Assembly: GCF_947568905.1 (NCBI RefSeq)
Contig: NC_079169.1
Location: 75,516,001 to 75,580,000 of the forward strand
Source: Ostrea edulis
Lineage: Eukaryota
Reading direction: 5' to 3'
DNA: 64,000 bases
Shown here: in pieces, positions 12,486-63,943 of the stretch
How positions within the stretch are numbered: position 1 is the first letter of the stretch
How the letters are laid out: each line of letters begins with the position of its first letter
The notes under the pieces: model-generated
Told to the model about the DNA's origin: nothing
What the model saw: only the letters and a program-made list of their open reading frames with translations
The model's database searches: none
Position numbers and translations under genes: made by a program

Positions 12486-15400
12486 GTTTTTTCTCCATTG
12501 ATTTCATATTTCGCATGTGGCTTTGTTATTAAGAGATGAAGAACCCTAATATTGATTTGAAAGTCAAGGTCACAATGGGACTTCATAGGAAGAGCTTGAA
12601 GACACTCATTGTGAGGGAATATGCCTCACCTCACAAAGCTCATGTTTTAATGGCTGCACTTGCCTATAGAACTCAGTTTGAATCAAAAGGAGTTTTAAGG
12701 CAAGACGCATTTATTCACTGCTCTGTTGTTGTGAGAGAAGTTGTGGCCCAAACTCATTCAATTGAAGGCTTACACTCATTCCTCAGTCATTGTGAAAGGA
12801 GGTTCTGCAGAAAAATCCCAGAGTTATGGTATGAACAAACCCAACATAGACCGGGTACTCTAGTTAGCACTGCTACAGGTCAGTGGCCGATATCAATATC
12901 AACTGTTATCACCTACACACTCTTGCCGGACACTCTGAGATGACCTCCACATTTAATCTCAGTAAAATTTGATAATACTCAAGATTTAAGGTCAAGTTCC
13001 AAGATGTAACAGGATCCAATATTTATTTAATATTTTTTTAAAATAAACTTTGAATGAAAGTCTTAAGAAAAATTTGTGAAGCATATCTTTATTGTACATT
13101 TTAAAGTTGGTGTCTGTGTGCTTATTTTAGAGCAATGACCTTTTTGCAATTGAAATTCAATATTTAGCTAATTCAAATATGCATTTGTTATGATTAGCAG
13201 GATTAAATCTCCTTAATAAATGTATTAAAATATAAAGTAAAATAATTTAACAAAAATGAAATTCATAAAGATATTCATAACATCTTTAAGTATCAATTGT
13301 GACCTTTTTGCACTTAAGTTTTAATAATATTTTTGTCTTAATACTCTAAAATTTTCAAATTCTTCAAAAGTTTTTCAGAAACTCATAAAATCAACATCTT
13401 AATCTCCTAATTTAAAATAAATGAAATTGAGGGTCCAATGTTGACCCTGCAAGTGCAATTCAAAGATGATATTTTATATTTAAAGGCTTATGTACACCTA
13501 TCAAAAATATTCACCTAGTAAGCCCTTCTTCAAAACATGAAAACCCCCATTTACTTATCAGTTAATGAAATGCCTAAAATTCTCGGTATGAATCTTAGAA
13601 GATTATAGTTTATCTTCAATGTCAACATGGTATGAATCTTAAAAAGATTATAGTTTGTCTTCAATGTTAACATTACAATCAAGTAGGAAGCACTTTGAAA
13701 GGGTAAATTGTATAGAAATCTGAGTTTTCATCCTTTTCATCTGAAAACCATTCACAAAATACAGTCCCTTTTAGATAGTGTGCGTAAACCAGACATAAGA
13801 TAAATTATATATATATTTACTGGCTGTAATAGCATAGCAGAAATTAGGATGCTGACTTCACAACTTGGAGGCTTGACCTCAATTTTCATGGTATTATAAT
13901 ATAATTACTTAACTATTTTGAGTTGTACAAAGAAATGCCCCATAACTAAAGGAGTGACAAGTTATTTCCACAGCCTTCTAACAATAAACATGATGCATCA
14001 ATCTTGGTGCCTAAGAACATTTACCATAGATATTGACTGTTCCTACACCAAGTACCTAGTACGTATTAAAAGCGAAAATCACATGTCTTTCAGATATGAC
14101 CTTGAAAACGGAGATCAAGTGTCATGGTAGGCATTTGTACGATAAAGAATTCTCACTGCTATGGCCCCGATCACCATGCTTAGATAAATCTGTGACACTT
14201 CACCTACAGCCGGTGATCAGCTCTATATGAGTGGAAAAATTTTCAAATGTAAAACAACAGAAAAACACAGATGCTTATTATGTGTACCAATCATTTGACA
14301 GTTTACAGATGAGTCACTATGTACATTGTACAGTAAGAGGTTTTGAAGCAGGTCTATTCCTCCATGTAGACCAAACTTGCTTGGATTATATCTTCAGAGA
14401 TGCATACTCCTGTGATACACTACATTGATAATATTAAGTACTAATTGCATTGTTCATTGTTTTAAGGATTTATTTCAATTTGGATTCTGACTTTCCTCTT
14501 TTTATGATGATGGCAGTTGTTGTAATATGTGTACTGACAACACATGAGTTGCAAATGACATTTTCAGAAGTAAAGGAATATATAAGATAATAATATGTAT
14601 ATGAATTGTTTCAGCCATTCAACAGATTTTGAAGTTCACAGAAACTGGTTAGCAATAACATTCAGCAGACCTCTAGAACAGTGGTACTATGAGGTAAATA
14701 TCACTATTGCCATTTATACACAGTACATTTATGTTGAAGTTTTTGTTTTGATTCACAATTTCATGGTTCAGCCAAACAGAAATCCCTGTTTGTACAATTT
14801 TGAGTACAGAAATACCATATCTCTGCTTGTATTTTTAGTTTTAAATTAGTAAAAAAAAAATTATGAATTTACACTGACTTTGCTTAAATCCCAACTTTAT
14901 ACGACACAAAGAGGTTGTCAGAATAAAACAAAACCATTCATATAAAGTGTAATGTCAGTTTTTAAACCAATAATGATGAAATGAATTTGCTACACCTAAG
15001 GTTGGTCTGTGTCTAGTTTGGTTGTTCTTGACAATGAACGTTCCAAATAAATACCTTTTTTTTTTAAAATGAGCTAAAGAGTGCAGAAAGCTATGCAACC
15101 TTTTGTCTATTTTGATTTTAGTAGCAGGAAAATAATGTGAAGGAAAAAATGTTTAATTAGATTCATAATTACATTCCATGGATAGTACATTTATGTTTTC
15201 AGAAAACATCAGAATGGACCTTGGATTATCCCCCTTTCTTTGCATGGTTTGAGTATTTCCTTGCAAAAGTGGCTTACTATTTTGACAAGGACATGTTGAG
15301 GTTGGAGAATCTGAATTATGCAAGTGAGGCCACTGTCCTTTTTCAGCGACTTTCTGTTATAGTAACAGATTTTATCCTGGTGCTAGCTGTCAACAAGTAA

Positions 15401-18400
15401 GAAAATGATGGATGTGAAGTGTTCAAGATGTCTAATGATGTATACTTTGTCTATTGCCAAGATTCTTATACCTCTCATCTAATAATGTAAACTTTGCTTA
15501 AAGCCAAGATACTTCTATCACTTGTTCAGAGGTTTATGTTATACAAATTCAGTTGACTTAAAAACAATTCCTGAACTTCATAGAATTTGGTTTATGAATA
15601 TGATTTATACTTAACATTTTTATGGGGTCATTCATTTATGAATATAATTTGTACTCAGCATTTTTTATGCCCGTTAGATCAAAGAACGGGGGCATATTGT
15701 TTTTGTTCTTGTGACCCAGACCTTGGGGTTTAACCCAAATTTCAAAAATTTGACCTTGCTCACAACTTTGGAATGGAAAGTGTTAGGGCTCTCATATTTC
15801 ATTTGATCATTCCTTGTGATGTGGCCTTTCTTGTGTTACCAAATTTTTTACCTTGTGACCTTGGAGTTTGGTCTACTTTTAAGAAAAATGAATGTAGGTA
15901 ATATCTCCTGAGCTATTTTGTATATAATTTCCTTTTGACAAGACCTTTCATATGTTTCTTTGTTGCCATCAGTAGCATAGTGTTTCACAAACATAAATAT
16001 AAAATTAGACATGGGATTCCATTAAGATTATCACCAAATTTCCACAACATAGTTGTCAGTTCTGCATTACTATTATTTATATTGAATAGATACACAAGTC
16101 ATTTAATAGAATGGTATTCATAAACCTAATTTGTTTACATTATCAACCATGTTTATAGTGTGTACATAAACCTAATTTGTTTACATTATTAACCATGTTT
16201 ATAGTGTGTACATAAACCTAATTTGTTTACATTATCAACCATGTTTATAGTGTGTACATAAACCTAATTTGTTTACATTATTAACCATGTTTATAGTGTG
16301 TACATAAACCTAATTTGTTTACATTATTGACCATGTTTATAGTGTGTACATAAACCTAATTTGTTTACATTATTAACCATGTTTATAGGGTGTGGACATA
16401 AACCTAATTTGTTTACATTATTAACCATGTTTATAGTGTGTGTACATAAACCTAATTTGTTTACATTATTAACCATGTTTATAGTGTGTGGACATAAACC
16501 TAATTTTTTTACATTATTAACCATGTTTATAGTGTGTACATAAACCTAATTTGTTTACATTATTAACCATGTTTATAGTGTGTGGACATAAACCTAATTT
16601 GTTTACATTATTGACCATGTTTATAGTGTGTACATAAACCTAATTTGTTTACATTATTAACCATGTTTATAGTGTGTGGACATAAACCTAATTTGTTTAC
16701 ATTATTGACCATGTTTATAGTGTGTACATCAACCTAATTTGTTTACATTATTGACCATGTTTATAGTGTGTACATAAACCTAATTTGTTTACATTATTAA
16801 CCATGTTTATAGTGTGTGTACATAAACCTAATTTGTTTACATTATTGACCATGTTTATAGTGTGTACATAAACCTAATTTGTTTACATTATTAACCATGT
16901 TTATAGTGTGTGGACATAAACCTAATTTGTTTACATTATTAACCATGTTTATAATGTATGCTTCTGTTTTAGGTTCTGTAATTTTATGAAAAGTTCATGG
17001 ACCGAATCCAAATCATCTGATAGCAGCGTGTACTCCAACAAAGCCTTGGTTCTGTCGATTCTCATTTTGTGTAACTTTGGGCTGTTGATAGTGGATCATA
17101 TCCTTTTACTTGTGTACAAGATTAAAATCGTGTGTGAATAACACATATTGTGACTCTTCTTCTAAGTCAAATGAGTAGTGACTTGTTTGCCAATCACCCG
17201 GTTTATGACTGTATAACGGAGGTCCTGTGTCATGGAAGGCATTTGCACAATAAAGAACCCCCACTATTACAACCATAGGCACCATGCGCAAGTCAAAATT
17301 TGTGGCACTTCACCGAAACCTGGTTACGTCTCCGTGTGGGTGAAAATTGTCAAATGGGATGAAAACACTACCAAAAAAAAGTTAATTTCATTCAATCCTT
17401 GTATTTGAGTCAGAAAATATGTGTACAGTGTTGTTTGATGGCTAAAACAGGCACCATCCTGTTGATGTAGTCTATAACCTTTCCAAGATTTATCTACTTT
17501 TTAGCTCTTCAGTAGTATTAACTGCTGTCATGAAGAAAAAAGAAACTTTTTTAAAAACACAAGTATTTTTACAAAGACGGTTGACGAGACAGCTTGATTG
17601 AAAGCAATTCCATGTGTGTATAGTTGTTTTTTTTGGTTTTTTTGTTGTTTTTTTTTATTTATTAATTTTTTATTTTACAAATATTGACATAAGACAGAAG
17701 AACATTTGCCATTTTTTTCTAACCACTTTCACACACTTCCATACTCACACTCATACATTTGTTGGTAAGTGCTTGCATTTTTAATATAATTGTAAGAGAA
17801 AAATGATAACAATACAGAGCTCGAGTAAATAGATAAAAGTACATGTGGCTTCAAAAGTAGGGGGAAAAAAACATTGCTTGAAATAGCAAAATTATGGGTT
17901 TTTTTATGTTGTCAAAAAGTGTTTTCCATACATGCCAGGTATTTTCAAATTTTTGTATTTCTTGTGTATTGTTTTTAAATAAATGTCCACACCGACCTTA
18001 ACATCATTACATATTCACTTTCAATACAATGGCTTCATGTTTGGAATCCTTATATGGTCAATGACATGCATGTTACAGGTAAGGACATTTTTTTAGAATT
18101 CTTTCTTTTGCTTTGACATGTTTTAAATTTGTGTGTATATTCATACAGAGGCTCTTCCTGTATTACTTAGTTTAGATGCTCATAACTAATGATAGTACAG
18201 AACCCCCAAAATGCAGAAGAATTTTATTATGGATGATAGAATGAAGATGCTTTGTAGAATCAGGTCATTTGGGCAGCCATTTGGTTTGCAGTGTTGCTGA
18301 ACTTCAAACACATATACCTTTACATTGCTCCTGCCTACTTCATCTATCTGCTGAGACATTACTGCTTTAAATCAAACGGTAAGTCATGCGGAGGCCTGAT

Positions 18401-21311
18401 GCTGACACATAATTAATTTTTAAAAACGGTAATTTATAGTACCAGTGTGCGTTAATTTTGTGTCATTGTACTTGTTATTTACTACCCATGGATATAGCAT
18501 CCCCCCATTTTGATTGTTTTTGAATCAATAATAACATTTAGCAAGTACCTTATTCGTATTCAATTATTATTGTTTGTGTTTATTTTAGATGGAAGTTTCC
18601 AGCGGTCATCATTTTCACCATTTCGTCTCATTTCTCTGGGTCTTGTTGTCATTTATGTGTTTGCATTATCTTTTGGACCATTTCTGTATTTAGTAAGTTC
18701 AATACATATTTACTCATCTCTCACACTATCATTATTATCCACAAAATTTATTGCAATTTTTTTCATTTAATAAAATAGACTAATAAAATTTGCCCAGTGG
18801 TACATATGTATCTCTCATTATTTCCCATGTAAAGATTTCTTGGCAAATCGAAATTATCCTGAATGTTTCCTTTTTATATAGAAACAGGTGCCACAGGTTT
18901 TGTCTCGGTTATTTCCCTTCAAGAGAGGGCTGTGCCATGCCTACTGGGCTCCCAACTTTTGGGCTTTGTATAACTTTGTTGACAAAGTTTTAACAATGAT
19001 AGGTGAGAAATCTTTATAATGATGAACAAATAGTTTTTTGTTAAAAGCTTAATTTCTCAACTCCAGTGACTGCACTGATTTAATGCATTGTGATTATTTA
19101 AAACAGGATCTAGATTACATTTTACAACCGGTGCCCCTTCTGCAGTGATGACAGGGGGATTGGTTCAAGAATTCCATCATGTTGTGTTGCCATCTGTTCC
19201 CCCTGTTGCTACTCTTATAGCAACACTTCTTTCTATTGTGGTTTGTAGTCTAGTTTTTATAAAATGTTGATACATGAAATATGACACATATGGGCTTGAA
19301 AATTAGAATATTTGGAAAAATGATTTGTTTATGGTGTATCATTTTGGATGAAATTCTCATCATTGACAAAGTTTTTCAGGATTTTTACTAAAATTGTGAA
19401 CTTTTCATATTGCAGCCAGTCATGTATCATATGTGGGTTACTTCAAAAGGACCAGAAAGTTTTGTCAGAGCAACTGTCCTGTGTGCTTTTGGATCATACT
19501 TGTTTGGCTGGCATGTTCATGAAAAAGCCATCCTCCTCATCATTTTACCATTATGGTATATATATAATTCACTTCCTCTGTATCTTTTTTTTTTACATTT
19601 AGATTTATTAAAAACCTTCAATTATGAAACACTATCATTTTCAATGCAAGATTTTCCTTCTATCCAATTTATTCATGATTTCATAATCCATATGTACATG
19701 TTTGTATTTCTAGTTTGTTGGTGTTCAACAAAAAAGAAGATGCCTCCATTTTTCTGATCCTCTCTACAACAGGACACTATTCTCTTTTTCCGTTGCTATT
19801 CACACAAGCTGGTATGTTTGCTTTTGTGTATTTTTTCAAGTCGTATTCATTTGTGACACATGTGCCTATGACTTCATATTTCTCTAAGATAAGTTATGCA
19901 TAAGCAATTGTTTATTTTCCTTTACATTTTTATGGGTAGTTTGGAGACAGATCTACAGCTACATGCATGCTCATGCGTTCTCTTTCAAAAGGATAGGTTC
20001 AAAACCACTACAACTTTCTGTTTTTAGACTTGGGGGGGGGGGGGGGGGGGGTAGCACAGGCACATGTTTCTGTAAATAATATTATGGCATCTGTGTACTA
20101 AGAATTAACGCTTATTCTTAATAGCAAATAGACATCGTAAATTTATTTAAAGAAACAAGTGCCTGTGGGGGAGAGGCAGTATTTTATTATTTACAGCTTA
20201 ATCATTAACACATTCATGCTCTTCATTTCAGAAACCATGACCAAAATTGTCTTGATGTTAACGTATTCTGTGTGTGCATTTTCTAGTCTTGGATATATTT
20301 ACAAGTGAGTTTTTTAAAGATACCTGACATTGAATATTTCAATATTAAGTACTGTAGAATCATTTAAAGTCGTGGGGGCCAATTTTCGTGGATTACTGAA
20401 TTTTTACGGGTTCATGGGGACGTAATTTCGTGGATTTATATATTTGTAAGATTCTTGTATACTACATGTAGTTGTCTTTATTCGTTGAGGATGTAAATTC
20501 GTGGGTGAGGGGTACCCACGAATTCCACGAAAATTGAGCCACCACGAATTCTAATGATTCCACAGTATTCCAAAGTCACAACACATAATTAGGGCCCCAC
20601 ATGAAATGCAGTAGCCTTATAGAAATAACACTGTCTATCCATCTGTCAACGCTTTACTGTGATACATACAGATTTTGTACAGATATATTTTAAAATGAGA
20701 GAAAGAAACTTATAGATTTTGGTGGTCATATAACATTTATCATGACACAATAATGCAAAAACAGTTTTCAGGGTAGCAATTTAAAATTTTATACAGAAGG
20801 AGTTGACCATAAGAGAAAGACACCTTTTAATTAGGGCCCTGCATTGAAAATAGTGGCAGCCCTATAGCAATCACATTGTCTATCTGTCCATCATCATACT
20901 TGTTGTGACAAGATATCTAGAATAGTATACAATATAAAGCTTTTGTATTTTATTTTCAGTTATATATGTTCTTAGCTAGTGCTAATATTAAATGTGTTGT
21001 AATATTTTTGGACAACATGATATTTAATTACAATGTTTATAAACAAGAACAATATAATTTTTTCTATTTTTAGTTCTTGTTGGAATTGGAAGTCCCTGCC
21101 TCTTCTGAATTCACTGGAATCTGTATATATTATAGGACTTATTCCATTGGAACTATGGAACAGTGCAATATTTCCTTTATTTAACATTTCCAAAAAATTT
21201 CCATTTTTACCTTTAATGTTAATTTCCGTGTATTGTTCTGTGGGAGTAATTTACTCATGGGTCAAGTTTTACAAGATAACTTTACTGGACACAAAAATGA
21301 AATCTCAATAA
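8864..21311 (+). CDS. ALG8: Dolichyl-P-Glc:Glc1Man9GlcNAc2-PP-dolichol alpha-1,3-glucosyltransferase, 13 coding exons, 519 aa
   Basis: Exons: 8864-8928, 14615-14693, 15203-15396, 16973-17097, 18011-18078, 18258-18378, 18589-18692, 18882-19002, 19107-19240, 19416-19555, 19714-19811, 20232-20304, 21074-21311. Total 1560 nt in one open frame. Family motifs: [72 protein letters not shown]. All introns are GT-AG except intron 4 (AT-AC). Confidence 0.97.
9377..9835. mobile_element. MITE with long TIRs and a 5-bp target duplication (hAT-like CAGG termini)
   Basis: CAGGTTGGGAACACTTCCCCTATAGCGAGATATTCTCGCTAAAACGCGATTATCCCTC is inverted at the right end. TTTAT lies at 9372-9376 and 9836-9840. Located in ALG8 intron 1. 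Confidence 0.8.
10062..10304 (-). mobile_element. RTE-clade LINE reverse transcriptase C-terminal fragment
   Basis: The minus strand reads [77 protein letters not shown], with RLRWxGHV and GRxxxTW motifs. Flanked by a 24-bp direct repeat. Confidence 0.75.
11700..12481 (+). mobile_element. HINE/Helentron-like element carrying about three 165-170-bp HindIII-type satellite units
   Basis: Starts TTTTAGCTCACCTGAGC...GCTCAAGTGAGC, then a CGTCCGTCTGT microsatellite. Units recur near 11956, 12121 and 12292. Ends GTGAGCGATGTGGCCCATGGGCCTCTTGTT. Confidence 0.75.
16119..16952. repeat. Minisatellite, 18 units of 46-48 bp, in ALG8 intron 3
   Basis: Unit CATAAACCTAATTTGTTTACATTATTAACCATGTTTATAGTGTGTA. 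I counted 18 AACCTAAT cores. The array ends about 20 nt before the exon-4 acceptor. Confidence 0.97.
17098..18010 (+). other. U12-type (minor spliceosome) AT-AC intron of ALG8
   Basis: 5' site ATATCCTTTT at 17098, branch point CCTTAAC at 17996-18002, terminal AC at 18009-18010. Removing it restores [11 protein letters not shown]. Confidence 0.93.
20352..20565. mobile_element. Tc1/mariner-type MITE
   Basis: TA|CTGTAGAATCATT ... AATGATTCCACAG|TA, i.e. TIRs with TA flanks. Confidence 0.75.
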
Positions 21312-25516: not shown

Positions 25517-26517
25517 GGAGCGCCAAATTGACATAAACTCAGATAACTGAAGATATCTTCAATTATGTGAAGATATCATCAATTCATTTGATGCGCGCAA
25601 CAATTGAATTAAAGATTTCTTCAAATAATTAATGATATCTTCAATTCTGAATTATTGCGCGCATTAATTGAATTGATGAGAGCATTAATTCTTCAGTTGA
25701 ATTGATGCGCGCTTTAATTGATTTAATGATCTCTTCAAATGAATTGATGATATCAACAATTGAATTGATGCACGCAACAATTCAATTGAAGAGAGCAATA
25801 ATTGATATAATGCGCGCATTAATTCATTTGATGAGAGCAATAATGGATTTAATGCGCATTAATTCAATCATTGCTCTCTTCAATTGAATTAATGATATCT
25901 TTAATTCATTTGAAGAGAGCAATAATTCTTTTAGAGAGAGCAACTATATAATTAAAGATATCTTCAATTCAACATATCCATAATTGAATTAATGATATCT
26001 TTAATTGAATTGTTGCTCTTTTTAAAAGAATTTGTGCGCGAATTAATTCCTTATACAAAAGCATTGTAAATGATTTAAAGATATCTTCAATTGAATTAAA
26101 GAGATCATCAAATTATTTATAACGAGCTCTAAATTAATTATTGCGAGCAATATTTCTACTAAATTGATGCTCTCATCAAATGAAAGGAAGAGAGCAATAA
26201 TTGAATTAATGCGCGCATCAAATCTATTAATGTTCTCATTAATTGAATTAATGCGCGCATCAATTGAATTGAAGAGAGCAATAATTGAATTAATGCACGC
26301 ATTAAATAAATTATTGCTCTCATTAATTCAATTGATGCGCGCATTAATTTGATGGAAGCAATAATTGAATTGAAGCGCGCATTAATTCATTTGATGAGAG
26401 CAATAATTGATTTAATGCGCGTATTAATTCAATTAAAGAGAGCAATAATTGAATTGATGATATCTTCAAATAATTGAAGATATCTTCAATCTGAGTTTAT
26501 GTTAATTTGGCGCTCCA
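25517..26517 (+). mobile_element. Non-autonomous TIR element built from 21-bp repeats (copy 2)
   Basis: Same TIRs as copy 1, with TA flanks. An additional CAAAAC direct repeat lies outside both ends. Confidence 0.9.
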
Positions 26518-28265: not shown

Positions 28266-29487
28266 TTTATACCCGCACTTTCTAAAGAAAGTTCAAGTAT
28301 ATTATCCGTCCGTCTGTCACACTTTCTTCTTCCTCAAACTGCTCTTTTATTTCAAGTGGTAACCAATTGATCTTTTGGAATATGATAGATGGTGTACTGT
28401 AGATATATGATAAGGTTTTAGAATATTCAATTTTACCATGGGGGCAAAACGGGGGTAAAAAAAATGACGTTTTTTCAACAAAAACCTGGTTCCCAGAACT
28501 CCTCCCACATTTCAAGCAGTAGCCCAATCATCTTTTGGAAGATGATTGGTTGGGTCCTGTAGATGTGCAATAAGGTTTCGGAATTTTCATTTTCACCCTA
28601 GGGGCCAAATGGGGGTCGAAAATGATGCTTTTTAACACAACCCTGGTTCCCAGGACTCCTCTTACAATTTACACAGTATCCTAATAATCATTTGGAAAAT
28701 GATTGCTGGTGTCCTGTAGATGTGCAATAAGGTTTTGGAATTTTCATTTTCACCCTAGGGATCAAATAGGGGTCGAAAAATTACAATTTTGTACAAAGAA
28801 ACCCTGGTTCCCAGAACTCCTCTTACATTTTACACAGTAGCCTAATAATCTTTTGGAAGATGCTTGCTGGTGTCCTGTAGATGTGCAATAAGGTTTTGGA
28901 ATCTTCATTTTCACCCCTGGAGTCAGATGAGGGTCGAAAAATGACGTGGTTTCTTTTGCACATAAGAACCCTGGTTCCCAGAACTCCTCTTACATTTTAG
29001 GCAGTATCCTAATAATCTTTAGGGAGATGGTTGCTGGTGTCCTGTAGATGCACATTAGGGTTTCGGAATTTTTATTTTTGCCCTGGGGGCCAAGTGGGGG
29101 TAGAAAAATGACGATTTTGTACCAAAAAAAACCTTGTTCCCAGAACTCCTCTTACATTTTAAGCAGTATCCTAATAATCTTTTGGATGATTATTGCTGGT
29201 GTTCTGTAGATGTGCAATAAGGTTTTGGAATTTTTATTTTCACCCCTGGGGTCAAATGATCGAGGGTTGAAAAATGACATTTTTGCAAAAGAACACTCAG
29301 GTCCCCAGAACTCTTTTTACGTTTTAAGCAGTATCCTAATAATCTTTAGGAAATTGGTTGCTGGTGTTCTGTAGATGCGTAATAAGGTTTTGGAATTTTT
29401 ATTTTTGCCCTGGGGGCCAAATGGGGGTCGAAAATGATGCTTTTTGTACAAAAAACCTTGGTTCCCAGAACTCCTCTTACAATTTAT
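28266..29487 (+). repeat. Array of about seven 157-167-bp units behind a GTCC-microsatellite head (HINE-like element with a different satellite core)
   Basis: CCCAG(A/G)ACTCC recurs near 28491, 28648, 28809, 28976, 29138, 29304 and 29464. The head contains TATCCGTCCGTCTGTCAC. Antisense partial copies lie at about 23285-23620. Confidence 0.8.
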
Positions 29488-29755
29488 GCATTAATTAATT
29501 ATAAAATAACGATTGTGTCTTCTTTGCCAGTAACATTAATATGACGAAGAGTATATTTAAAGGCAAACACTTGTGTGTGGGTATTACTGTCTTATGATAG
29601 CATCTAGTTGTGTATGTTGACTTTCTTACGACTAGGTCTTTTCTGGTACGAGTTAACCATGCACGAGTTTTCAAGGTACGCATTGACGAAATATCTAAGA
29701 TGCAGTGATAGTGGACAGTGATTTTTTTAAAAGGAAAACAACAACGGTTATAATA

Positions 29756-30529
29756 ATGGCTACTGTGTCGAGTTTGTTGAAGTCGATAAATGCAGTTGGA
29801 AGAAAATGCTTCTTCTTTCAGCAAAATTTCAGATTTGTATCTATGTTGTCGTCAAGCCAAGTCACGATGGCGAAACATTCAGTTGTAGCATGGAGAAAAT
29901 TCGGATCCAAGGGACCGTTGCATCAGACACCTGTGCCGTCTGAAGCAGACAAAGCAATTGTAAATTATTTAAAAAGTGAAATCGAAAGCGAGATGGAAGC
30001 AGATATACACAACGTGAAAACATATTTCTCTGATTGGAAAATCGTAAAGGCAGGCACAGAAATCACAATGACCAAAAACTTCCAATCAGAGATCATCACA
30101 GTATTATTCAATGTTAATGACTCTTTAGAGGATAATTACGATGAATCCGAAGATGATAAATTTGATGGTCCCCCAATGTCTTCACGACCATCATTCATGG
30201 TGGAAATAGCAAAACCGAGTGGAATGAAAATGATGATAGAATGTGACTGCATACCAGACCAAGAGCCACTAGAACGTTTTGATGGGACAAGGGGGAATGA
30301 TGTGTTTGTGATCACCAGTGTTCAAGTATATAAAGGTGAACGTTTGCCAAAAAACTATGTGTGCCAAGAATTTGATTCGGTGCTCTATGACAAACTTACA
30401 AATGTCCTACAAGAAAGGAAGATTGACAACAAGTTTGTAGAGGAACTGGTTGAGTTTAGTACAGATTATGAGCACCAGCAATATGTTGATTTCTTACAGA
30501 AAATGAAATCCCATATGAGTGAAAACTGA
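29756..30529 (+). CDS. C1QBP: Intronless C1QBP/p32/gC1qR (Mam33 mitochondrial glycoprotein family) paralog A, 257 aa
   Basis: Uninterrupted ORF with a basic, acid-free N-terminal presequence, then DKAIVNYLKSEIE, ITVLFNVN, PSFMVEIAK and LYDKLTNVLQERKIDNKFVEELVEFSTDYEHQQYVDFL, matching the p32 fold motifs. The symbol denotes family; orthology is untested. Confidence 0.9.
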   Translation: MATVSSLLKSINAVGRKCFFFQQNFRFVSMLSSSQVTMAKHSVVAWRKFGSKGPLHQTPVPSEADKAIVNYLKSEIESEMEADIHNVKTYFSDWKIVKAGTEITMTKNFQSEIITVLFNVNDSLEDNYDESEDDKFDGPPMSSRPSFMVEIAKPSGMKMMIECDCIPDQEPLERFDGTRGNDVFVITSVQVYKGERLPKNYVCQEFDSVLYDKLTNVLQERKIDNKFVEELVEFSTDYEHQQYVDFLQKMKSHMSEN

Positions 30530-33500
30530 ACTTTATTAACCTGACATTTATTACAGTAATGTAGTACAGTTTATGGAATATTATGTTATCATGTAATATG
30601 TATCATTGTCTGTTTCTGATCACCAAATTAATTCAGAGTCATACCAAAGGTCCAATGGACATCATCAATTGTGAATGTAAATTGTGACCAAATATCCACT
30701 TTATGAAAGTCTTAAACAATCTAATGAAATGTTCCCTGTGTATCAAAACAAAAGGAATTTAATAAGTATGTTAGACTATGACCTACTTTTGTTAGTTGGT
30801 CCTATCAATGGCTATTGATTCAATAAAGATGTTGATTTTACCTGATGAAATTTCCTGTGACTATTTCAAGACCATGGGAATGGCTGTAATATAGTGTTAC
30901 TGTAAAAGTATGAAGATGGATTGAAAGTGTGCTTGTAACTATGTGAACATGATCATATTCTTGGTCCAAATCTTTTTAGTTTTGATAAGGTTCACATGAC
31001 TTGGTTAAATTTATAATCACAGACACTAAATGAGTTACTGAGTGAAGCAGAGGTTTAAATGTACTGAGTACATAATAGTACTTTCAACTTTCTCAGACAC
31101 CAGCTTCTTCAAACAATGTATCTATACCCAAAGGCGGATCCAGCGCTGGCGACCCCACACTTTATTTCAAGTGTTTCTTTAGACCTGTGAGACTGTAACC
31201 CTCTGTTCTGAAATTTATGGATCCGAAACTAATTGCACATGGTATTTAATCAACTTCAGATATGTACTTTGTGCTTACTCACCCCCCTTCCAACTTTTAA
31301 AACTTTGTATCAGTCAAGCCGAAAGCCTACTTCAAAGGGGAGGCGAATTTTATTTATTTGTGGTAACTTTCACAGGGGCCTAAGATATCATTTTTAATGA
31401 TTATAATTAAAAGAGTTTTCGGTTATGAAATATTTTTCGGTGGGTTTCGTTTCGGTAGATTTCGTTTCGCACTTACAGGTACCCAATGCTACATCCATAA
31501 AAATATGCCTAAATTATGTTGTTGTTTTTTTTTTTACGACTGATGTTGCAAAATTATAACGACATCACTTAATTTAATGGAAATACCAATTTTTATAAAA
31601 ATATAAAACAAAGAAAATTTACCAAATGTATCTTTTCTTCTGAATTTGTTAAATTTGCTAAAAATATGCGATTAAAGGAAAAGATTGATGTTTCGCTATA
31701 TAAATGTTCATAATTCTGATAAAAATAACAGACACATATTTTGAAACCTGGATAGCTCTTTGTTATAATAAACAACGAAAGTAACGTATGTTTCTTATTT
31801 TTCCTTTCATTACTATAAACACATTTCTATTCAAAAATGGAAAGAAACATATTTGCACATTTCTAACGATCAGTTTACAATAATAATTTAAAGAAAATGT
31901 TTTATTTCCCAACATATTGATTAAATGTGTTTTTGTTGCTCATTTTGGAATACCTTTCCACAGAAACTGTTAGCATAATCCATCACGCGGTGTTATGAAT
32001 GAATATTTAACGTGAATCTTTTAATAAAAACATTTTTTCATGGTATAGCTCTTGTATGTTCTAAAACATTTTTTCATAGTAGTTCTTCTGTATTTCTGCT
32101 CTCCTAAGAACTATTTCTGAAAGAAATGATATAAAAACAATTGGAATGCTAGTAATCCTAATTGTTCGCGAACAATTAAAGGACTTTCCACCTTTTCATT
32201 GTTTTTTCCTGACAATTTTTATCTTCATTACTTCTTCACTTTTATCGCCTACATTATGTAACTGTACAACGCCTAAATCCTTAAATAAAAAAACCCACAA
32301 AAAAACCCCACACACAACAGTTCCGGTCACCTATCGCGATGAATGCTGCTCAACTTGCATCATTGCGACAGACTCTCTACCACAATACCAGACTTACTAG
32401 CTCTTCTCAGCTTTGGGAATTTCCTGGCTGACAGCAGTGGGAAAAAATCCACCACATTTCCATTAAAATCTATCAGTTGTGGATATTTTTAAAAGGGGTC
32501 AAAGTTTAGAGTTGTAATTCATAATTTCGAAACCAATTCAGAAGTCCATACTCGCCCATATGCTATTTCAATGCTATCTGAAGCAAGAAAGAGAGTATAA
32601 AAAGTGCCATTTTCTGGTCTTTTTGGATGACCTTGGCATTTGACCTTGACCTATTTTTCAAGGTCAATGTCACCCAATCCGTTCCAGTGGGTTCCGTCTC
32701 TCTACGACTATTACTTTAGGAGTCGTAAATTTCTGACGTAGAAATCGTAAAACATAAGGGGTAATAACTTCCGTAAAGGGTCATCGAATTCTTTTGTTTA
32801 ATGCCCATATCAATTCGACTAAGTCACATCTATGTTTTAAAAAAGGTTTGATGCTCCTATCATTCACGGTTTTCAAGATGAATCGATAACAAGGGTTTCT
32901 TGCGTAAAGTCCTATAAGTTCGGTAGGGGTCAAAGTTCAAGTACGCAGGGTGAAATCTGAGCATCTTTCAAGATGTCGAATATGATGGTCTACATTAGTT
33001 TTCGATAAGTCTTGAGGCGTAAAAAATTTTTGGCGGAAGAAAATAATAAGAAACAGAACAATATCAATAGGACTTTCCACAGAAAGGTGGAAAGCCCTAA
33101 TTATACGTAATGGAATTTCTGGTAACATGCATTTCTGAATTTCTCTACAAGATTGCATAGGACAATCATCAGAGATTAATCAATTCATTTCTAAGATATA
33201 TTATGAAAAGATGCTGAATTCTGGCAAATTGATAAACGTAGAGTAGCATAGTTACATGTATCATAAATAAGACAGTAGCAGAGAAAAACATGGTCTAAAT
33301 TTCTTGGAGAGGATATCTGTATATACCAGTGAATATAGGAACAACAACACATTTGTTTGTTCATAACATAGTTGATATTCAACAAACATTTCATTCATGA
33401 TGATATTTTGTCAATGTGTAGTTTAATATTTAATGTCTAATCAAGAATTTGATACATACGTTACTTTGAGTGCCTAAAAATTCTTGACGAATTCTTTAAA

Positions 33501-33735
33501 AAAAAGTTCTAACTCCTTAATTAATCGTGGGAGAAGGCGACAGGGGTTGATCATCGGCTAAGTTTTACATTTCCACGACAATACTGTTTTTTTAAGGGAG
33601 GGGTAGGGATTCGACCTCTGCATGTAAAAATAACCAACATTGCATGAAATGATAAAATGGGAGAGACGTACCATTGTTGCTACGTGCCAGATAATGACTG
33701 TTGTGCTCATTTGAGTAATTGCAGTGCAAGAAGTT

Positions 33736-34741
33736 TGGAGCGCCAAATTAACATAAACTCAAATAATTGAAGATATCTTCAATTATTTGAAGATATCATC
33801 AATTCATTTGATGCGCGCAACAATTGAATTAAAGATCTCTTCAAATAATTAATGATATCTTCAATTCTGAATTATTGCTCGCATTAATTGAATTCATGAT
33901 AGCATTAATTCTTCAACTGATTTAATGATCTCTTCAAATGAATTAATGATATCAACAATTGAATTGATGCGCGCTACAATTCAATTGAAGAGAGCAATAA
34001 TTGATATAATGCGCACATTAAATCAATTGATGAGAGCAATAATTGAATTGATGCGCGCATTAATTCATTTGATGAGAGCAATAAGTGATTTCATGCGCGC
34101 ATTAATTAAATTAAATTAATTGAATTAATGATATCTTTAATTCTTTTGAAGAGAGCAATAATTCTTTTAGAAAGAGCAACTATATAATTAAAGATATCTT
34201 TAATTCAACATATCCACAATTGAATTAATGATCTCTTTAATTGAATTGTTGCTCTCTTTAAAAGAATTGATGCGTACACTAATTCCTTATACAAAAGCAT
34301 TGTAAATGATTTAAAGATATCTTCAATTGAATTAAAGAGATCATCAAATTATTTAAATCGAGCTCTAAATTAATTATTGCGAGCAATATTTCTACTAAAT
34401 TGACGCTCTCATCAAATGAATTGAAGAGAGCAATAATTGAATTAATGCGCGCATCAAATCTATTATTGCTCTCATCAATTGAATTGAAGAGAGCATTAAT
34501 ATTGAATTAATGCGCGCATTAAATCAATTATTGCTCTCATTAATTCAATTGATGCGCGCATTAATTCAATTGATGAGAGCAATAATTGAATTGAAGCGCG
34601 CATTAATTCATTTGATGAGAGCAATAATTGATTTAATGCGCGCATTAATTCAATTAAAGAGAGCAACAATTGAATTGATGATATCTTCAAATAATTAAAG
34701 ATATCTTCAATTATTTGAGTTTATGTTAATTTGGCGCTCCA
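33736..34741 (+). mobile_element. Non-autonomous TIR element built from 21-bp repeats (copy 3)
   Basis: Same TIRs, flanked by TT (left) and TA (right). An additional AAGAAG direct repeat lies outside both ends. Confidence 0.9.
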
Positions 34742-35588
34742 TAAAGAAGAGCTGTGAGTTGACTTACACTCAAAATTTAATTTTCAAAAGATTGCATCAC
34801 ACGCGGAAAATTTATTTCAACAGAAATATTACACTAGAGATACCAATTCGAGATGATTAACATGTACTGTTTATTGGCACAGGTCTAATATACATTTAGC
34901 AACAAATAGTTTTGTTCAGCGTAAAATGATAAATTATAATAATGTCAACATATATGCGTTTGTTGCACATGTAATTTCGGGCAAATCCTAGGGTGGATCC
35001 AGAGCTGGGTTTAAGAATTATATTCAATTTTAACGAACTTTTGAGTCAAAATGATATGAAAGGTGGATACTTACATGTATTTACTTGCATCATTCAAATT
35101 TATCAACACCACTTTCTAGGATAAATAAGACGAAACACTAGGCTAGTGGTATAATGCGCAACCTAATGATCCTCTGTGGGTCCAAATTGATAGACAATTT
35201 AAAATTGAAAAAGAAGAGCTAGGAACTGCTCAGAATGCAGGATTTTGCGCCATTTACCGTTGAGCTCCTGGACCTTTGATGCATGATGATGATCACCTAT
35301 TCTACATTAAATCAGCTTTGAAATAAGTTTCTATTGAACAAAGCATCAATGTTTATATGTACACCCCCACCCTTTTTGTATTTTTGAATAAGTTTTAGCT
35401 GGCAATTAATTACAATCAGATATAGTAAATTTTCTATCTATTCCTTTAAAACAACACCGCAATATTGCAATGTGCTGCTCGCACTCTGTAATCATATGAT
35501 CGGGTTCGGCATACAAAAGCACGTTCACATGTTGCAGTGATACTGTGATTAACCTTTCCTGGAGTTTTCATTTATAAAAGTGACGAAC

Positions 35589-36377
35589 ATGTCTTCATTA
35601 CTAATGAAATCTTTCTTGAGCAGTGCTCAGAAATCGAGACGATCCCTCAGCACAGTTGCTTCATTTAAAAGATTGTTGTCACCTGCTAATTATCACAAAA
35701 CCGAGATAGCAGGTGGTGTGTCCATATCGAGGAAATTCGGGTACAATCCTTGCCAGACGAGGTGGCTCTACACGGAGACGGACCAGGACATGTCTCAGCA
35801 TATCGCTAAGGAAATTGAGAATGAGAAAAAATCTGCTATCAGCAAGGCATCTGATTACTTCAAAGATTGGAAAATTACACCAGATGGATGCGAAATATCG
35901 ATGTCCAGGAAAGAGGGAAACGAATCAATAACAATAGAATTCAATGTTAACAATGCCACTGACTTAGTCGATGAAGGGTCATCAGATTTCAACGTCGAGG
36001 AAACAAATGAAATGCCACAAATGATCTGCAGGCCACCATTCATTGTAGAGATTGGTAAACCAAGTGGCACGAAGATCCGAATTTCTTGTCAGTTTGTCAG
36101 CGAACTAGAGGCAGACGATGGCGATGAGCAAGACGTCAGGGATAAATTTGAAATTGTACAGTTTAGTGTAACCAAAGGGGATATCTTGCCATCAACATAT
36201 GTTTGCAGTGGAGAAACAATGGATGGAGAAATGTATGAAAAGTTGATGGACATGTTGGATGAACGCAAAATAGACAATGAATTTGCAAAAGAGTTGATAG
36301 ATATTGGCACCAGATATGAGCATAAAGAGTACATCAAGTTCCTATCCACATTTAAGGCTTTTGTGGATGAAAAATGA
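35589..36377 (+). CDS. C1QBP: Intronless C1QBP/p32 (Mam33 family) paralog B, 262 aa
   Basis: Uninterrupted ORF with the presequence MSSLLMKSFLSSAQKSRRSLS, then ITIEFNVNN, PPFIVEIGK and MYEKLMDMLDERKIDNEFAKELIDIGTRYEHKEYIKFL. The symbol denotes family; orthology is untested. Confidence 0.9.
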   Translation: MSSLLMKSFLSSAQKSRRSLSTVASFKRLLSPANYHKTEIAGGVSISRKFGYNPCQTRWLYTETDQDMSQHIAKEIENEKKSAISKASDYFKDWKITPDGCEISMSRKEGNESITIEFNVNNATDLVDEGSSDFNVEETNEMPQMICRPPFIVEIGKPSGTKIRISCQFVSELEADDGDEQDVRDKFEIVQFSVTKGDILPSTYVCSGETMDGEMYEKLMDMLDERKIDNEFAKELIDIGTRYEHKEYIKFLSTFKAFVDEK

Positions 36378-36616
36378 CAGTGTAAAACTTTGTCACAGTA
36401 GGCAAATAATATGATTAACATTAGAATAGTAGATTAATCAGTGTTTTAAGATTGCTACTACATGTATCAATTAAAAAGAGAGCTGTGGAATGTTTCTACC
36501 CAAATTAATCTGGACTTCATTCCAAACAACTTTCTAACATGTCATCTTCACAAATGTTTGAATCTGGATTAAATATGGACAAAATTTGCAAACATCATGG
36601 TGTATAAATATTTATT

Positions 36617-36932
36617 ATTTTACGTCCTGTCAAGAATTTTTCACTCACATTGAGACATCACCAGCTGTAGGTGAAGTACCATGTGCGTAGCGCTCAGGGC
36701 CAGAGCAGTGAGGGTTTTTTATCATGCCAATTACTGCCACGGCATGGGACCTCTGTTTTTAAGGTCATATCTGAAATACCAACGATTCTCATTTCTAAAT
36801 GCCGAGCGTTTGGCAAAGGAACAATCACTACAAATGTTAATGTCTTAGGTTTGACAAGGCCATGGCATGAACAGGGCTCAAACTCATGACTTCCCAGTTA
36901 CAAAGCAAACACTCTACCACTGAGCTACTGCG
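36617..36932 (-). mobile_element. tRNA-headed SINE
   Basis: The minus strand begins GTAGCTCAGTGGTAGAG...GAGTTTGAGCCC and carries the shared SINE core and tail. Confidence 0.7.
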
Positions 36933-37368: not shown

Positions 37369-38441
37369 TGGAGCTCCAAATTAACATAAACTCAAATAAT
37401 TGAAGATATCTTCAATAATTTGAAGATATCATCAATTCATTTGATGCGCGCAACAATTGAATTAAAGATCTCTTCAAATAATTAATGATATCTTCAATTC
37501 TGAATTATTGCTCGCATTAATTGAATTATGATAGCATTTTAAATTCTTCAGCTGAATTGATGCGTGCTTTAATTGAATTAATGATCTCTTTAAATGAATT
37601 AATGATATCAACTATTGAATTGATGCACGCTACTATTCAATTGAAGAGAGCAATAATTGATATAATGCGCGCATTAAATCAATTGATGAGAGCAATAATT
37701 GAATTGATGTGTGCATTAATTGATTTGATGAGAGCAATAATTGATTTAATGCGTGCATTCAATTATTGCTTTCTTCAATTGAATTAATGATATCTTTAAT
37801 TCTTTTGAAGAGAGCAATAATTCTTTTAGAGAGAGCAACTATATAATTAAAGATATCTTCAATTCAACATATCCACAATTGAATTAATGATATCTTTAAT
37901 TGAATTGTTGCTCTCTTTAAAAGAATTGATGCGCGCATTAATTCCTTGTACAAAAGCATTGTAAATGATTTAAAGATATCTTCAATTGAATTAAAGAGAT
38001 CATGAAATTATTTATACCGAGCTCTAAATTAATTATTGCGAGCAATATTTCTACTAAATTGATGCTCTCATCAAATGAATTGAAGAGAGCAATAATTGAA
38101 TTAATGCGCGCATCAAATCTATTATTGCTCTCATTAATTGAATTAATGCGTGCATCAAATCTATTATTGCTCTCATTAACTGAATTAATGCGCGCATCAA
38201 TTGAATTGAAGAGAGCAATAATTGAATTAATGCGCGCATGAAATCAATTATTGCTCTCATTAATTCAATTGATGCGTGCATTAACTCAATTGATGAGAGC
38301 AATAATTGAATTGAAGCATGCATTAATTCATTTGATGAGAGCAATAATTGATTTAATGCGTGCATTAATTCAATTAAAGAGAGCAATAATTGAATTGATG
38401 ATATCTTCAATTATTTAAGTTTATGTTAATTTGGCACTCCA
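37369..38441 (+). mobile_element. Non-autonomous TIR element built from 21-bp repeats (copy 4)
   Basis: TA|TGGAGCTCCAAATTAACATAAACTC ... TTTATGTTAATTTGGCACTCCA|TA. Confidence 0.9.
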
Positions 38442-63708: not shown

Positions 63709-63943
63709 GTCATATTTCTAGATAGAGCTATGAAATATTTGATAGTGTGTATAAAATGTTATTTTTGTAACTCTTTCGTTAAAGCAGGTGGGGTTTCCCC
63801 CCGACTTTGTCTGATCGTCTTAATTCACACTTTGGCTTCCTGTCGAAATGGATCTCTTAGAATAGTTACTATGCATGTATACCAATTGGAAGTTTGTAAT
63901 TCATACATTATCAACTGAGCTAAAGTAATGTTGGTTTGTTTAT

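What the first reader, a model, noticed from the sequence alone, without database searches (positions are those of the whole stretch)
29756..36377. Tandem pair of intact, intronless, highly divergent C1QBP/p32 genes
Two complete single-exon ORFs with mitochondrial-type presequences lie 5 kb apart on the same strand. By eye they share only about 35-40% of residues in the best block, yet neither has a stop or frameshift, which implies long purifying selection. Human C1QBP is single-copy and multi-exon. The pattern suggests an old retroposition followed by tandem duplication and specialisation. Two hypotheses: germline or sperm-specific mitochondrial paralogs, as is common for nuclear-encoded mitochondrial retrogenes, or diversification of gC1q receptors alongside the known bivalve C1q-domain expansion. 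As p32 is a trimer, heterotrimers are also possible.
Basis: partly seen in the sequence, partly recalled or inferred. Interest (0 to 1): 0.75.

Follow-up and report, generated by a model that had tools for sequence, protein, structure and literature searches.

The report
Three intronless oyster p32 genes
True oysters appear to have lost the usual six-exon gene for the mitochondrial protein p32/C1QBP and carry instead three old, intron-free copies (two are this tandem pair, both transcribed), a clean but ordinary-in-kind case of a processed gene copy replacing its parent and then duplicating.

Summary
Window 29756-30529 (A, 257 aa) and 35589-36377 (B, 262 aa) are intact same-strand ORFs 5.06 kb apart. 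Both are clear MAM33/p32 members and are 39% identical.

A third intronless copy (C) lies on another chromosome, nested in an intron of a PP2A-type phosphatase gene. Four whole-genome searches found no intron-bearing parent. Scallop, pearl oyster and a gastropod have multi-exon genes (six coding exons mapped in scallop), so the intronless state is derived.

A, B and C each have orthologs in Saccostrea and Crassostrea/Magallana. The A-B tandem, with ALG6/8 upstream, is conserved in Saccostrea echinata. The triplication therefore predates the split of those oyster genera.

All three are under purifying selection: dN/dS is about 0.26-0.40 for A, 0.11-0.19 for B and 0.08-0.15 for C. RNA-like runs cover A and B but not the unique DNA between them, and one run shows B only.

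Best reading: retrogene replacement followed by duplication, with A the fastest-evolving and possibly more restricted copy. The germline, immune and heterotrimer ideas remain untested. This is a new member of a known kind, of moderate interest. The scan has no earlier C1QBP note on other DNA.

The parts
29756..30529 (+). Copy A: single-exon MAM33/p32 gene, 257 aa plus stop. It is the fastest-evolving of the three oyster paralogs.
   Evidence: ORF. Pfam PF02330 at 67.9 bits. AlphaFold model matches human p32 1P32 with target TM 0.88 and rmsd 2.4. Orthologs are S. echinata (61% identical) and a C. virginica cluster (49%). dN/dS is 0.26-0.40. The identical protein sits on 13 contigs from different runs.
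29552..29561 (+). TATA-like TATATTTAAA, 28 nt upstream of the shared 5' end (29580) of the contigs that carry A. Putative core promoter.
   Evidence: Sequence read directly. All five contigs aligned (of the 13 that carry A) start at 29580. That point is 90 nt beyond the nearest repeat array, which ends at 29490. Promoter function is inferred.
29580..30850 (+). Copy A transcript, unspliced. The 5' end lies between 29580 and 29691. The main 3' end is about 30845-30850, after AATAAA at 30822-30827. A minor or longer form runs to about 31108.
   Evidence: Logan contigs span 29580-31108 colinear with the genome. The contig of the RNA-like run X7 spans about 29691-30850 at depth 31.6, followed by a weak 2.7x contig. 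The hexamer was read directly.
31110..35415 (.). Spacer between A and B. It is mostly dispersed repeats, including 42/84-bp arrays at 33936-34680, with short unique stretches.
   Evidence: Repeat bins have a depth of thousands in DNA run X8. The unique bins sampled (31600-31999, 33400-33599) have zero depth, and 33200-33399 near zero (0.32), in RNA-like run X7, but single-copy contigs at about 4x depth from X8 lie on unique stretches at 33328-33703. TRF arrays.
35589..36377 (+). Copy B: single-exon MAM33/p32 gene, 262 aa plus stop. It scored highest against the Mya and Argopecten C1QBP queries; copy C scored highest against the Pinctada query.
   Evidence: ORF. Pfam PF02330 at 63.2 bits. Orthologs are 68-73% identical in Saccostrea, Crassostrea and Magallana, and NCBI names them C1QBP, mitochondrial(-like). 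It is the best own-genome match to the Mya and Argopecten queries. dN/dS is 0.11-0.19.
35559..36590 (+). Copy B transcript, unspliced. Contigs start at 35531-35559.
   Evidence: X7 contig of 1032 nt starts at 35559 at depth 57.7, and the X1 contig starts at 35531. Logan contig L021 spans 35416-36658 colinear with the genome. The hexamer was read directly. Only positions up to 35999 were laid, so the 3' end is inferred.
14616..21266 (+). Multi-exon ALG6/ALG8-family glycosyltransferase gene upstream of A. It anchors the synteny shared with Saccostrea echinata.
   Evidence: Exon-by-exon PF03155 matches at C6:75530616-75537266. The same family lies upstream of the S. echinata pair. The last exons align at 81-93% DNA identity.
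28370..29490 (.). 161-bp satellite array (6.9 copies) directly upstream of A's putative promoter.
   Evidence: TRF.

Best explanation
A and B are two of the three p32/C1QBP (MAM33-family) genes of true oysters. All three are intronless, intact and old.

The likeliest history is as follows. In the oyster stem lineage, a processed mRNA copy of the ancestral six-exon C1QBP gene was reinserted into the genome. One or more further insertions or duplications followed. One copy (C) landed inside an intron of a PP2A-type phosphatase gene. Another duplicated in tandem to give A and B. The intron-bearing parent was then lost (retrogene replacement, leaving 'orphan' retrogenes).

Each product keeps a basic N-terminal presequence and an acidic p32 fold. 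The inferred function is that of p32/Mam33: an acidic mitochondrial-matrix protein, trimeric in the solved human structure, that supports mitochondrial translation and OXPHOS. The ancestral job is inferred to be divided among three paralogs. A is the most derived and possibly more restricted in expression.

Shown: gene structures, copy number, orthology, conserved synteny, purifying selection, the fold of A, and transcription of A and B in RNA-like runs. Inferred: retroposition as the mechanism, the order of events, mitochondrial location, trimer formation and division of labour.
For: - Family and fold: Pfam MAM33 for both copies. The family profile hits human p32 1P32 at E = 2e-41. The model of A matches 1P32 with target TM 0.88. 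Each clade keeps 32-35 of the 43 most conserved family columns.
- Copy number: exactly three loci, all without stops, were found with the Pfam HMM and with the Mya, Pinctada and Argopecten proteins at E <= 10.
- Outgroups are multi-exon: Argopecten has 6 coding exons, and Pinctada and Batillaria genes span 5-12 kb.
- Tree: clades A, B and C each have 100/100 support and contain Ostrea-type, Saccostrea and Crassostrea/Magallana members. Oyster monophyly has 89/80 support and (A,B) has 87/71.
- Synteny: ALG6/8, then A, then B, with the same strand and spacing in S. echinata, where both genes are single-exon.
- Nesting of C: it sits on the same strand between exons carrying GDIHGQ / GDFVDRG / GNHE / HGG upstream and SDPEDV / RAHQ downstream, in both the own genome and S. 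cucullata.
- Selection: dN/dS is 0.26-0.40 for A, 0.11-0.19 for B and 0.08-0.15 for C. Against a closely related species, A shows 10 synonymous and 7 non-synonymous changes.
- Expression: X7 and X1 cover A (depths 31.6 and 89.7) and B (57.7 and 85.5) but not the unique spacer, whereas DNA run X8 covers everything at roughly 2-7x. Contig ends fall 17-23 nt after AATAAA or ATTAAA.
Against: - No poly(A) remnant or target-site duplication is visible after either gene. This is expected at this age, but it leaves retroposition inferred from intron absence, parent absence and C's nested position.
- Oyster monophyly (89/80) and the (A,B) pairing (87/71) are only moderately supported. An unnamed clade (P0037, P0064, P0069) groups weakly beside the oysters, and its gene structure is unknown.
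- dS is about 1-2, close to saturation, so the dN/dS values are rough.
- The run types are coded '?' or 'RNA?'. I call them RNA only from the coverage contrast and the contig ends.
- Six-frame searches could miss a very divergent parent split into short exons.
- Mitochondrial targeting and trimer formation were not tested.
Confidence: 0.75

Rival explanations
1. In-situ intron loss. The A/B locus would be the ancestral C1QBP locus, and it lost all five introns by recombination with a cDNA. It then duplicated in tandem, and only C is a dispersed retrocopy.
For: All tools show only that introns are absent, not how they went. A and B lie between ordinary genes rather than inside a host gene. Another follow-up in this scan (s1-287421; not checked by me) reports large-scale loss of neighbouring introns in this genome.
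Against: The one called neighbour of the Argopecten gene within 10 kb is a SET-domain gene. No listed SET-domain match lies within 1.6 Mb of copy C or within about 10 Mb of the A/B locus. No ALG6/8 gene was called within 10 kb of the Argopecten gene. This is a weak test with a single neighbour.
Confidence: 0.2
2. A is a tissue-restricted (for example germline) neofunctionalised paralog, while B and C keep the housekeeping role.
For: On the tree, A's branches within its clade are about twice as long as those of B and C, and its dN/dS is 2-3 times higher. Run X21 holds B at depth 7-12 but essentially no A. A was not listed for X21 or X22.
Against: A is assembled full length in at least 13 runs from two run-accession series. 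Its depth is similar to B's in X7 and X1. It keeps 32 of the 43 conserved family positions. The tissue of every run is unknown.
Confidence: 0.25
3. The paralogs diversified as gC1q receptors, in step with the bivalve expansion of C1q-domain proteins.
For: There is no direct evidence here. From established knowledge, p32 binds C1q globular heads in mammals, and crustacean gC1qR acts in antiviral defence (PMC12645952, listed; only its abstract as printed there was read).
Against: All three keep long presequence-like N-termini. They evolve under purifying rather than diversifying selection at the whole-gene level. Three copies is a small number beside hundreds of C1qDC genes. No paper on oyster C1QBP was found.
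Confidence: 0.1
4. One of the two copies is a decaying or unexpressed pseudogene that is open only by chance.
For: None was found.
Against: Open frames of 257 and 262 codons are conserved across several oyster genera, with dN/dS well below 1. The A protein is identical across 13 runs. Both copies are covered in RNA-like runs.
Confidence: 0.02

Closest known systems
Human C1QBP / p32 / gC1qR / HABP1 (PDB 1P32, 6SZW)
   Same: Same Pfam family. The model of A superposes on 1P32 (target TM 0.88, about 30% identity). The layout is shared: an N-terminal helix, an antiparallel sheet and two C-terminal helices. Both have an acidic mature domain and a long basic presequence.
   Different: From general knowledge, the human gene is single-copy with six exons. 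Oysters have three copies with no introns and no six-exon gene. C1q binding and trimer formation were not tested here.
Yeast Mam33 (PDB 3QV0) and trypanosomatid/algal p22/p32-like mitoribosome-associated proteins
   Same: Same fold family; they were recovered by both the profile search and the fold search. Their role in mitochondrial translation and ribosome assembly is the function I infer for the oyster proteins.
   Different: Only 15-22% identity. The oyster proteins are clearly of the animal C1QBP type.
Retrogene replacement / 'orphan' retrogenes (amphioxus SYCP1, PMC5803294; human orphan retrogenes, PMC3548309)
   Same: A single-exon copy survives while the multi-exon parent is gone. Outgroups keep the multi-exon gene.
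   Different: Here the replacement is followed by, or combined with, amplification to three long-lived paralogs. These include a tandem pair and a copy nested in a host-gene intron. I read only the titles and abstracts of these papers, as listed.
Canonical mollusc C1QBP (Argopecten, Pinctada imbricata, Mya arenaria, Dreissena polymorpha, Patella, Haliotis, Batillaria)
   Same: Orthologous family, 26-41% identical to the oyster copies, with the same length and domain layout.
   Different: Those genes are multi-exon and span 5-12 kb. In the tree they are separated from the oyster clades by long stems of 0.55-1.1 substitutions per site.

Membership tests
MAM33 / p32 / C1QBP family (PF02330) | Sequence match to the family profile above the curated cut-off, over the full domain | tested here: met
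   A scores 67.9 bits and B 63.2 bits against a cut-off of 21.9, covering profile positions 1-211 and 3-212 of 212. The profile of oyster sequences hits 1P32 at E = 2.3e-41.
MAM33 / p32 / C1QBP family (PF02330) | p32 fold: N-terminal helix, multi-stranded antiparallel sheet, two C-terminal helices | tested here: met
   The model of A has pLDDT of 90 or more for 147 residues and pTM 0.71. Foldseek's top hits are 6SZW and 1P32, at E = 5e-17 to 3e-16 with target TM 0.85-0.88. B was not modelled.
MAM33 / p32 / C1QBP family (PF02330) | Strongly acidic mature protein | tested here: met
   Mature-region pI is 4.46 for A, 4.40 for B and 4.21 for C.
MAM33 / p32 / C1QBP family (PF02330) | Cleavable mitochondrial presequence and matrix location | tested here: inconclusive
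   The 61-64 N-terminal residues have 8-11 K/R and 0-1 D/E, and are disordered in the model. No targeting predictor or localisation experiment was available.
MAM33 / p32 / C1QBP family (PF02330) | Doughnut-shaped trimer | tested here: inconclusive
   Only an A+B pair was submitted. It scored 0.30 against a mark of 0.34, giving no verdict. Homotrimers were not modelled.
MAM33 / p32 / C1QBP family (PF02330) | Binding of C1q globular heads (the gC1qR activity) | not testable with these tools
   This needs binding assays.
Functional retrogene (processed copy), orphaned | No introns in the CDS where orthologs in outgroups have conserved introns | tested here: met
   A, B and C are single ORFs. Argopecten has 6 coding exons, and Pinctada and Batillaria are multi-exon with similar exon sizes.
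Functional retrogene (processed copy), orphaned | Parent gene absent from the genome | tested here: met
   Four six-frame whole-genome searches found only the three intronless loci. The limit of the test is that very divergent short exons could be missed.
Functional retrogene (processed copy), orphaned | Poly(A) tract remnant and target-site duplications | tested here: not met
   No A-run follows the 3' ends of A or B. Target-site duplications were not searched for. Loss of these marks is expected for an event older than the split of the sampled oyster genera.
Functional retrogene (processed copy), orphaned | Insertion at a new locus unrelated to the parent | tested here: inconclusive
   C is nested in a phosphatase intron in two genera, which fits an insertion. 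For A/B there is only a one-neighbour synteny test, and it was negative.
Functional retrogene (processed copy), orphaned | Transcribed and under purifying selection | tested here: met
   Coverage contrast in X7 and X1, with contig ends at poly(A) signals. dN/dS is 0.08-0.40. The run types themselves are not on record.

The most novel reading that the evidence does not exclude
Oysters have split the several roles of the normally single-copy p32 among three ancient retrogene-derived paralogs. Those roles include mitochondrial translation and OXPHOS support versus extra-mitochondrial, immune or germline roles. On this reading A, the fast-evolving copy, would be a specialised form that is tissue-restricted or co-assembles with B into mixed trimers. 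Oysters would then be a natural separation-of-function system for p32.
Probability: 0.2. Interest if true: 0.55.

Novelty: new member of a known kind. Interest (0 to 1): 0.35.

Why it matters
p32/C1QBP is a much-studied, multifunctional protein. From general knowledge it is encoded by a single gene in well-studied animals, and its mitochondrial and cell-surface roles are hard to separate. A lineage that discarded the canonical gene and has kept three divergent intronless paralogs across the oyster genera sampled here is a natural experiment in dividing those roles. It is also a clean, datable example of retrogene replacement in molluscs, where such events are little documented.

For genome annotation, the result flags two faulty gene models. 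The S. echinata A model is truncated. A Magallana gigas UniRef entry (P0010), named a Ser/Thr phosphatase domain protein although it carries a MAM33 domain and matches copy C, may merge copy C with its host phosphatase; that last point is my inference.

The kind of event is well known, and the genes are already present in public oyster annotations as 'C1QBP-like'.

Tried and rejected
- Heteromer test: an A+B pair of mature domains scored 0.29-0.30 against a mark of 0.34. This gives no verdict and is not evidence either way.
- Synteny test for the origin of the loci: the only neighbour called beside the Argopecten gene is a SET-domain gene, and no listed SET match in the own genome lies within 1.6 Mb of copy C or about 10 Mb of the A/B locus. 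The test is too weak to decide.
- Look-ups of the Mya (P0024) and Dreissena (P0023) genes for exon structure found nothing on record. The exact 262-aa B protein is also not on record.
- Identifying the unnamed clade nearest the oysters (P0037, P0064, P0069) failed. There were no names in the cluster look-up, and the Atlas search returned only generic MAM33 clusters.
- Paper searches for oyster or bivalve C1QBP/gC1qR and for the run accessions found nothing specific.
- Pfam on single phosphatase exons gave only one weak Metallophos hit (one search was a frame slip). PDB sequence searches and the visible motifs settled the family instead.
- The listed differences between B and the related species were truncated by the tool (4 of 8 shown), so no ratio was computed for B from them.
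- A pseudogene or chance ORF is rejected on conservation, dN/dS and coverage.

Full report
**Observation.** The window holds two uninterrupted + strand ORFs at the stated coordinates. A runs from ATG 29756 to the stop at 30529 (257 aa). B runs from ATG 35589 to the stop at 36377 (262 aa). They are 5,059 bases apart.

Both match Pfam MAM33 (PF02330) across the whole 212-position profile, at 67.9 and 63.2 bits against a cut-off of 21.9. They are 39% identical over 219 residues, E = 5e-46. Each begins with 61 residues rich in K/R/S/T and almost free of D/E (pI 10.7-11.8), followed by an acidic domain of pI about 4.4. The 'mitochondrial-type presequence' rests on composition only.

**Which genome.** The window is chromosome-scale contig C6 of an 895-Mb, 52-contig assembly. 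The nearest named proteins are from Saccostrea, then Crassostrea/Magallana. In the tree the window's copies pair with Saccostrea in clades A and B, and both sit apart from the Crassostrea/Magallana members. I infer a true oyster of the Ostrea type. The species name was not given, and this is an inference.

**A third copy and no parent.** A six-frame search of the whole genome with the Pfam model found exactly three loci, all without stops. They are A, B and a third (C) on contig C2 at 12,222,215-12,222,991, minus strand, 258 aa. Searches with the canonical C1QBP proteins of Mya arenaria, Pinctada imbricata and Argopecten at E <= 10 returned the same three loci and nothing else. No intron-bearing parent or exon relic was detected. 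The caveat is that such searches match exon by exon and could miss very divergent short exons.

**The intronless state is derived.**
- In Argopecten the gene spans 5.2 kb, with six coding exons of about 68/46/27/41/28/49 residues.
- In Pinctada imbricata it spans 11.9 kb.
- In the gastropod Batillaria it spans 5.2 kb.
- Exon sizes are similar where mapped.
- Dreissena and Mya entries carry isoform labels.
- From general knowledge, human C1QBP also has six exons.

**Age and orthology.** Each paralog has its own orthologs. For A these are S. echinata (61%) and a C. virginica cluster (49%). For B they are S. echinata, S. cucullata, M. gigas and C. virginica (68-73%). For C they are S. cucullata (72%) and Crassostrea clusters (64-65%).

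A maximum-likelihood tree of 44 sequences gives 100/100 support for each of the clades A, B and C. Within A and B the window's copy groups with Saccostrea, apart from Crassostrea/Magallana. Within C the deep branching is unresolved. Oyster monophyly has 89/80 support and an (A,B) pairing 87/71. In the exhaustive representative search the three oyster clusters score 395, 377 and 323 bits. The next proteins, from other molluscs, drop to about 205 bits.

In S. echinata the A and B orthologs lie in the same order and on the same strand, 5.2 kb apart. Both are single-exon, with an ALG6/8-family gene upstream. The same gene lies at window 14616-21266. DNA alignment shows colinear matches at the ALG exons, a repeat array, and the A and B coding sequences. 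The triplication and the tandem arrangement therefore predate the split of the oyster genera sampled here. Within the limits of the tree, they postdate the split from pearl oysters and scallops.

**Copy C is nested.** In both S. cucullata and the window's genome, C lies on the same strand between short blocks of 86-100% amino-acid identity. These blocks carry the PPP-phosphatase motifs GDIHGQ, GDFVDRG, LRGNHE and HGG upstream, and SDPEDV...RG and RAHQ downstream. They match PP2A-type catalytic subunits in the PDB. From memory of the human sequence they look most like PPP6C.

An intronless gene sitting in an intron of a conserved housekeeping gene is what an insertion would leave. This is the most direct hint of retroposition in the data. 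It may also explain why a M. gigas UniRef entry with a MAM33 domain, matching copy C at 64% identity, is named as a Ser/Thr phosphatase domain protein. That the entry is a merged gene model is my inference.

**Selection.**

| Copy | Compared with | dN | dS | dN/dS |
|---|---|---|---|---|
| A | S. echinata | about 0.29 | about 1 | 0.26-0.40 |
| B | S. echinata | about 0.145 | about 1 | 0.11-0.19 |
| C | S. cucullata | about 0.16 | 1-2 | 0.08-0.15 |

dS is near saturation, so they are rough.

An independent closer comparison uses the differences shown by a related species' contig over A's CDS from 30000 to 30526. It gives 10 synonymous and 7 non-synonymous changes. With roughly three times as many non-synonymous as synonymous sites, a rough rule of thumb rather than a computed count, this again points to purifying selection.

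On the tree A's branches within its clade are about twice as long as B's or C's. All three clades keep 32-35 of the 43 columns that are at least 80% conserved in non-oyster homologs. The A protein is identical on 13 contigs from different runs.

**Transcription.** Four runs were laid on window 30000-35999.
- X8 behaves as genomic DNA. It gives roughly 2-7x depth on the genes and lays single-copy contigs at about 4x on unique spacer stretches.
- X7 comes from the same sample as a large DNA run. It gives 31.6 on A and 57.7 on B, and zero or near zero in the unique spacer bins.
- X1 is a related species, with 3.8% divergence on A and 1.7% on B. It gives 89.7 on A and 85.5 on B, and zero in most unique spacer bins (2.45 in one, 33400-33599).
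- X21 gives 7-12 on B and essentially nothing on A.

X7's A contig ends at about 30845-30850, which is 18-23 nt after AATAAA (30822-30827). Its B contig length implies an end near 36590, 17 nt after ATTAAA (36568-36573).

Thirteen contigs of 1529-1531 nt carry A, and all five that were aligned start at 29580. That point is 28 nt downstream of TATATTTAAA and 90 nt beyond the nearest repeat. All contigs are colinear with the genome, so no UTR intron is seen.

The run types are not on record. 'RNA' is my reading of the coverage contrast and the contig ends.

**Fold.** A profile of the oyster sequences hits human p32 (1P32) at E = 2.3e-41 over the whole mature domain. An AlphaFold model of A, the most divergent copy, has 147 residues at pLDDT of 90 or more and a disordered N-terminus (residues 1-47). 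It has the helix, sheet and two-helix layout. It matches 6SZW and 1P32 with target TM 0.85-0.88. Leishmania, Chlamydomonas and Trypanosoma mitoribosome-associated p32-like proteins and yeast Mam33 follow.

**Interpretation.** The best-supported account is retrogene replacement in the oyster stem lineage, with amplification to three copies. At least one processed copy was inserted, C is a clear insertion into a phosphatase intron, and A and B arose by tandem duplication. The six-exon parent was lost.

The order of events cannot be resolved. It is also open whether C came from the parent's mRNA or from a retrocopy's mRNA. In-situ intron loss at the A/B locus is not excluded, because the single-neighbour synteny test was negative but weak.

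Functionally, I infer acidic mitochondrial-matrix p32/Mam33-type proteins, trimeric like the solved human protein. B and C are the conservative copies. A is the faster-evolving and possibly more restricted copy.

The heteromer prediction gave no verdict.

**Comparison and novelty.** Retrogene replacement and 'orphan' retrogenes are established concepts (PMC5803294 and PMC3548309, seen). The three oyster genes are already in NCBI annotations as 'C1QBP, mitochondrial(-like)'. I found no paper describing the triplet, its intronless state or the loss of the parent. Another note of this scan reports a comparable intronless survivor, MOCS1A, in true oysters (s1-301881). I did not check it.

I rate this a new member of a known kind. 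It is a solid and tidy comparative-genomic result of moderate interest, not the surprise that the first score implied.

Noticed in passing
G000:C2:12222215-12222991 (-); L031:1260-9937: The third intronless C1QBP copy (C) is nested, on the same strand, in an intron of a PP2A-subfamily (PPP6C-like) phosphatase gene. It lies between the HGG exon and the SDPEDV exon. The nesting is conserved in Saccostrea cucullata (L029).
   Followed up: yes
L004:9866-10651 (Saccostrea echinata): The public gene model for the A ortholog (216 aa, LOC133190085) starts at an internal Met. The ORF continues 45 codons upstream to MSNLCKS..., which adds a presequence homologous to that of A.
   Followed up: partly
window 24381-24680, 26162-26460, 33936-34114, 34405-34680, 37590-37822, 38053-38400: Arrays of a 21/42/84-bp AT-rich unit containing GCGCGC flank both A and B. 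Over the 33.6-34.8 kb arrays the DNA run shows depths of tens of thousands, so this is a very abundant dispersed element. No link to the duplication was shown.
   Followed up: no
window 11944-12431 and 22384-23214: Arrays of a 171-172-bp satellite lie on either side of the ALG6/8 gene. Related arrays occupy the corresponding interval in S. echinata (L004:2385-2674 and 5039-6481) at 65-74% identity.
   Followed up: no
window 28370-29490: A 161-bp (328-bp higher-order) satellite of 6.9 copies ends 90 bp before A's putative transcription start.
   Followed up: no
window 16119-16957: A 46/94-bp tandem array of about 18 copies at 94-96% identity lies between matched exons of the ALG6/8 gene.
   Followed up: no
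window 63061-63918: A long open exon encodes the N-terminal half of an amiloride-sensitive (DEG/ENaC, PF00858) channel at E = 3e-24. It runs towards the window's end.
   Followed up: partly
window 23770-24270: An ORF with weak winged-helix and Mos1-transposase HTH matches, probably a mariner-type transposon remnant.
   Followed up: no
window 52647-52973: A 27-bp unit in 12 copies at 94% identity, open in both strands' frames. It is the subject of another first-stage note (s1-287500) and was not examined here.
   Followed up: no
window 29595-29705: If transcription starts at 29580, A's 5' UTR carries three upstream ATGs. Those at 29595 and 29700 open very short ORFs. The frame at 29659 was not read.
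   Followed up: no
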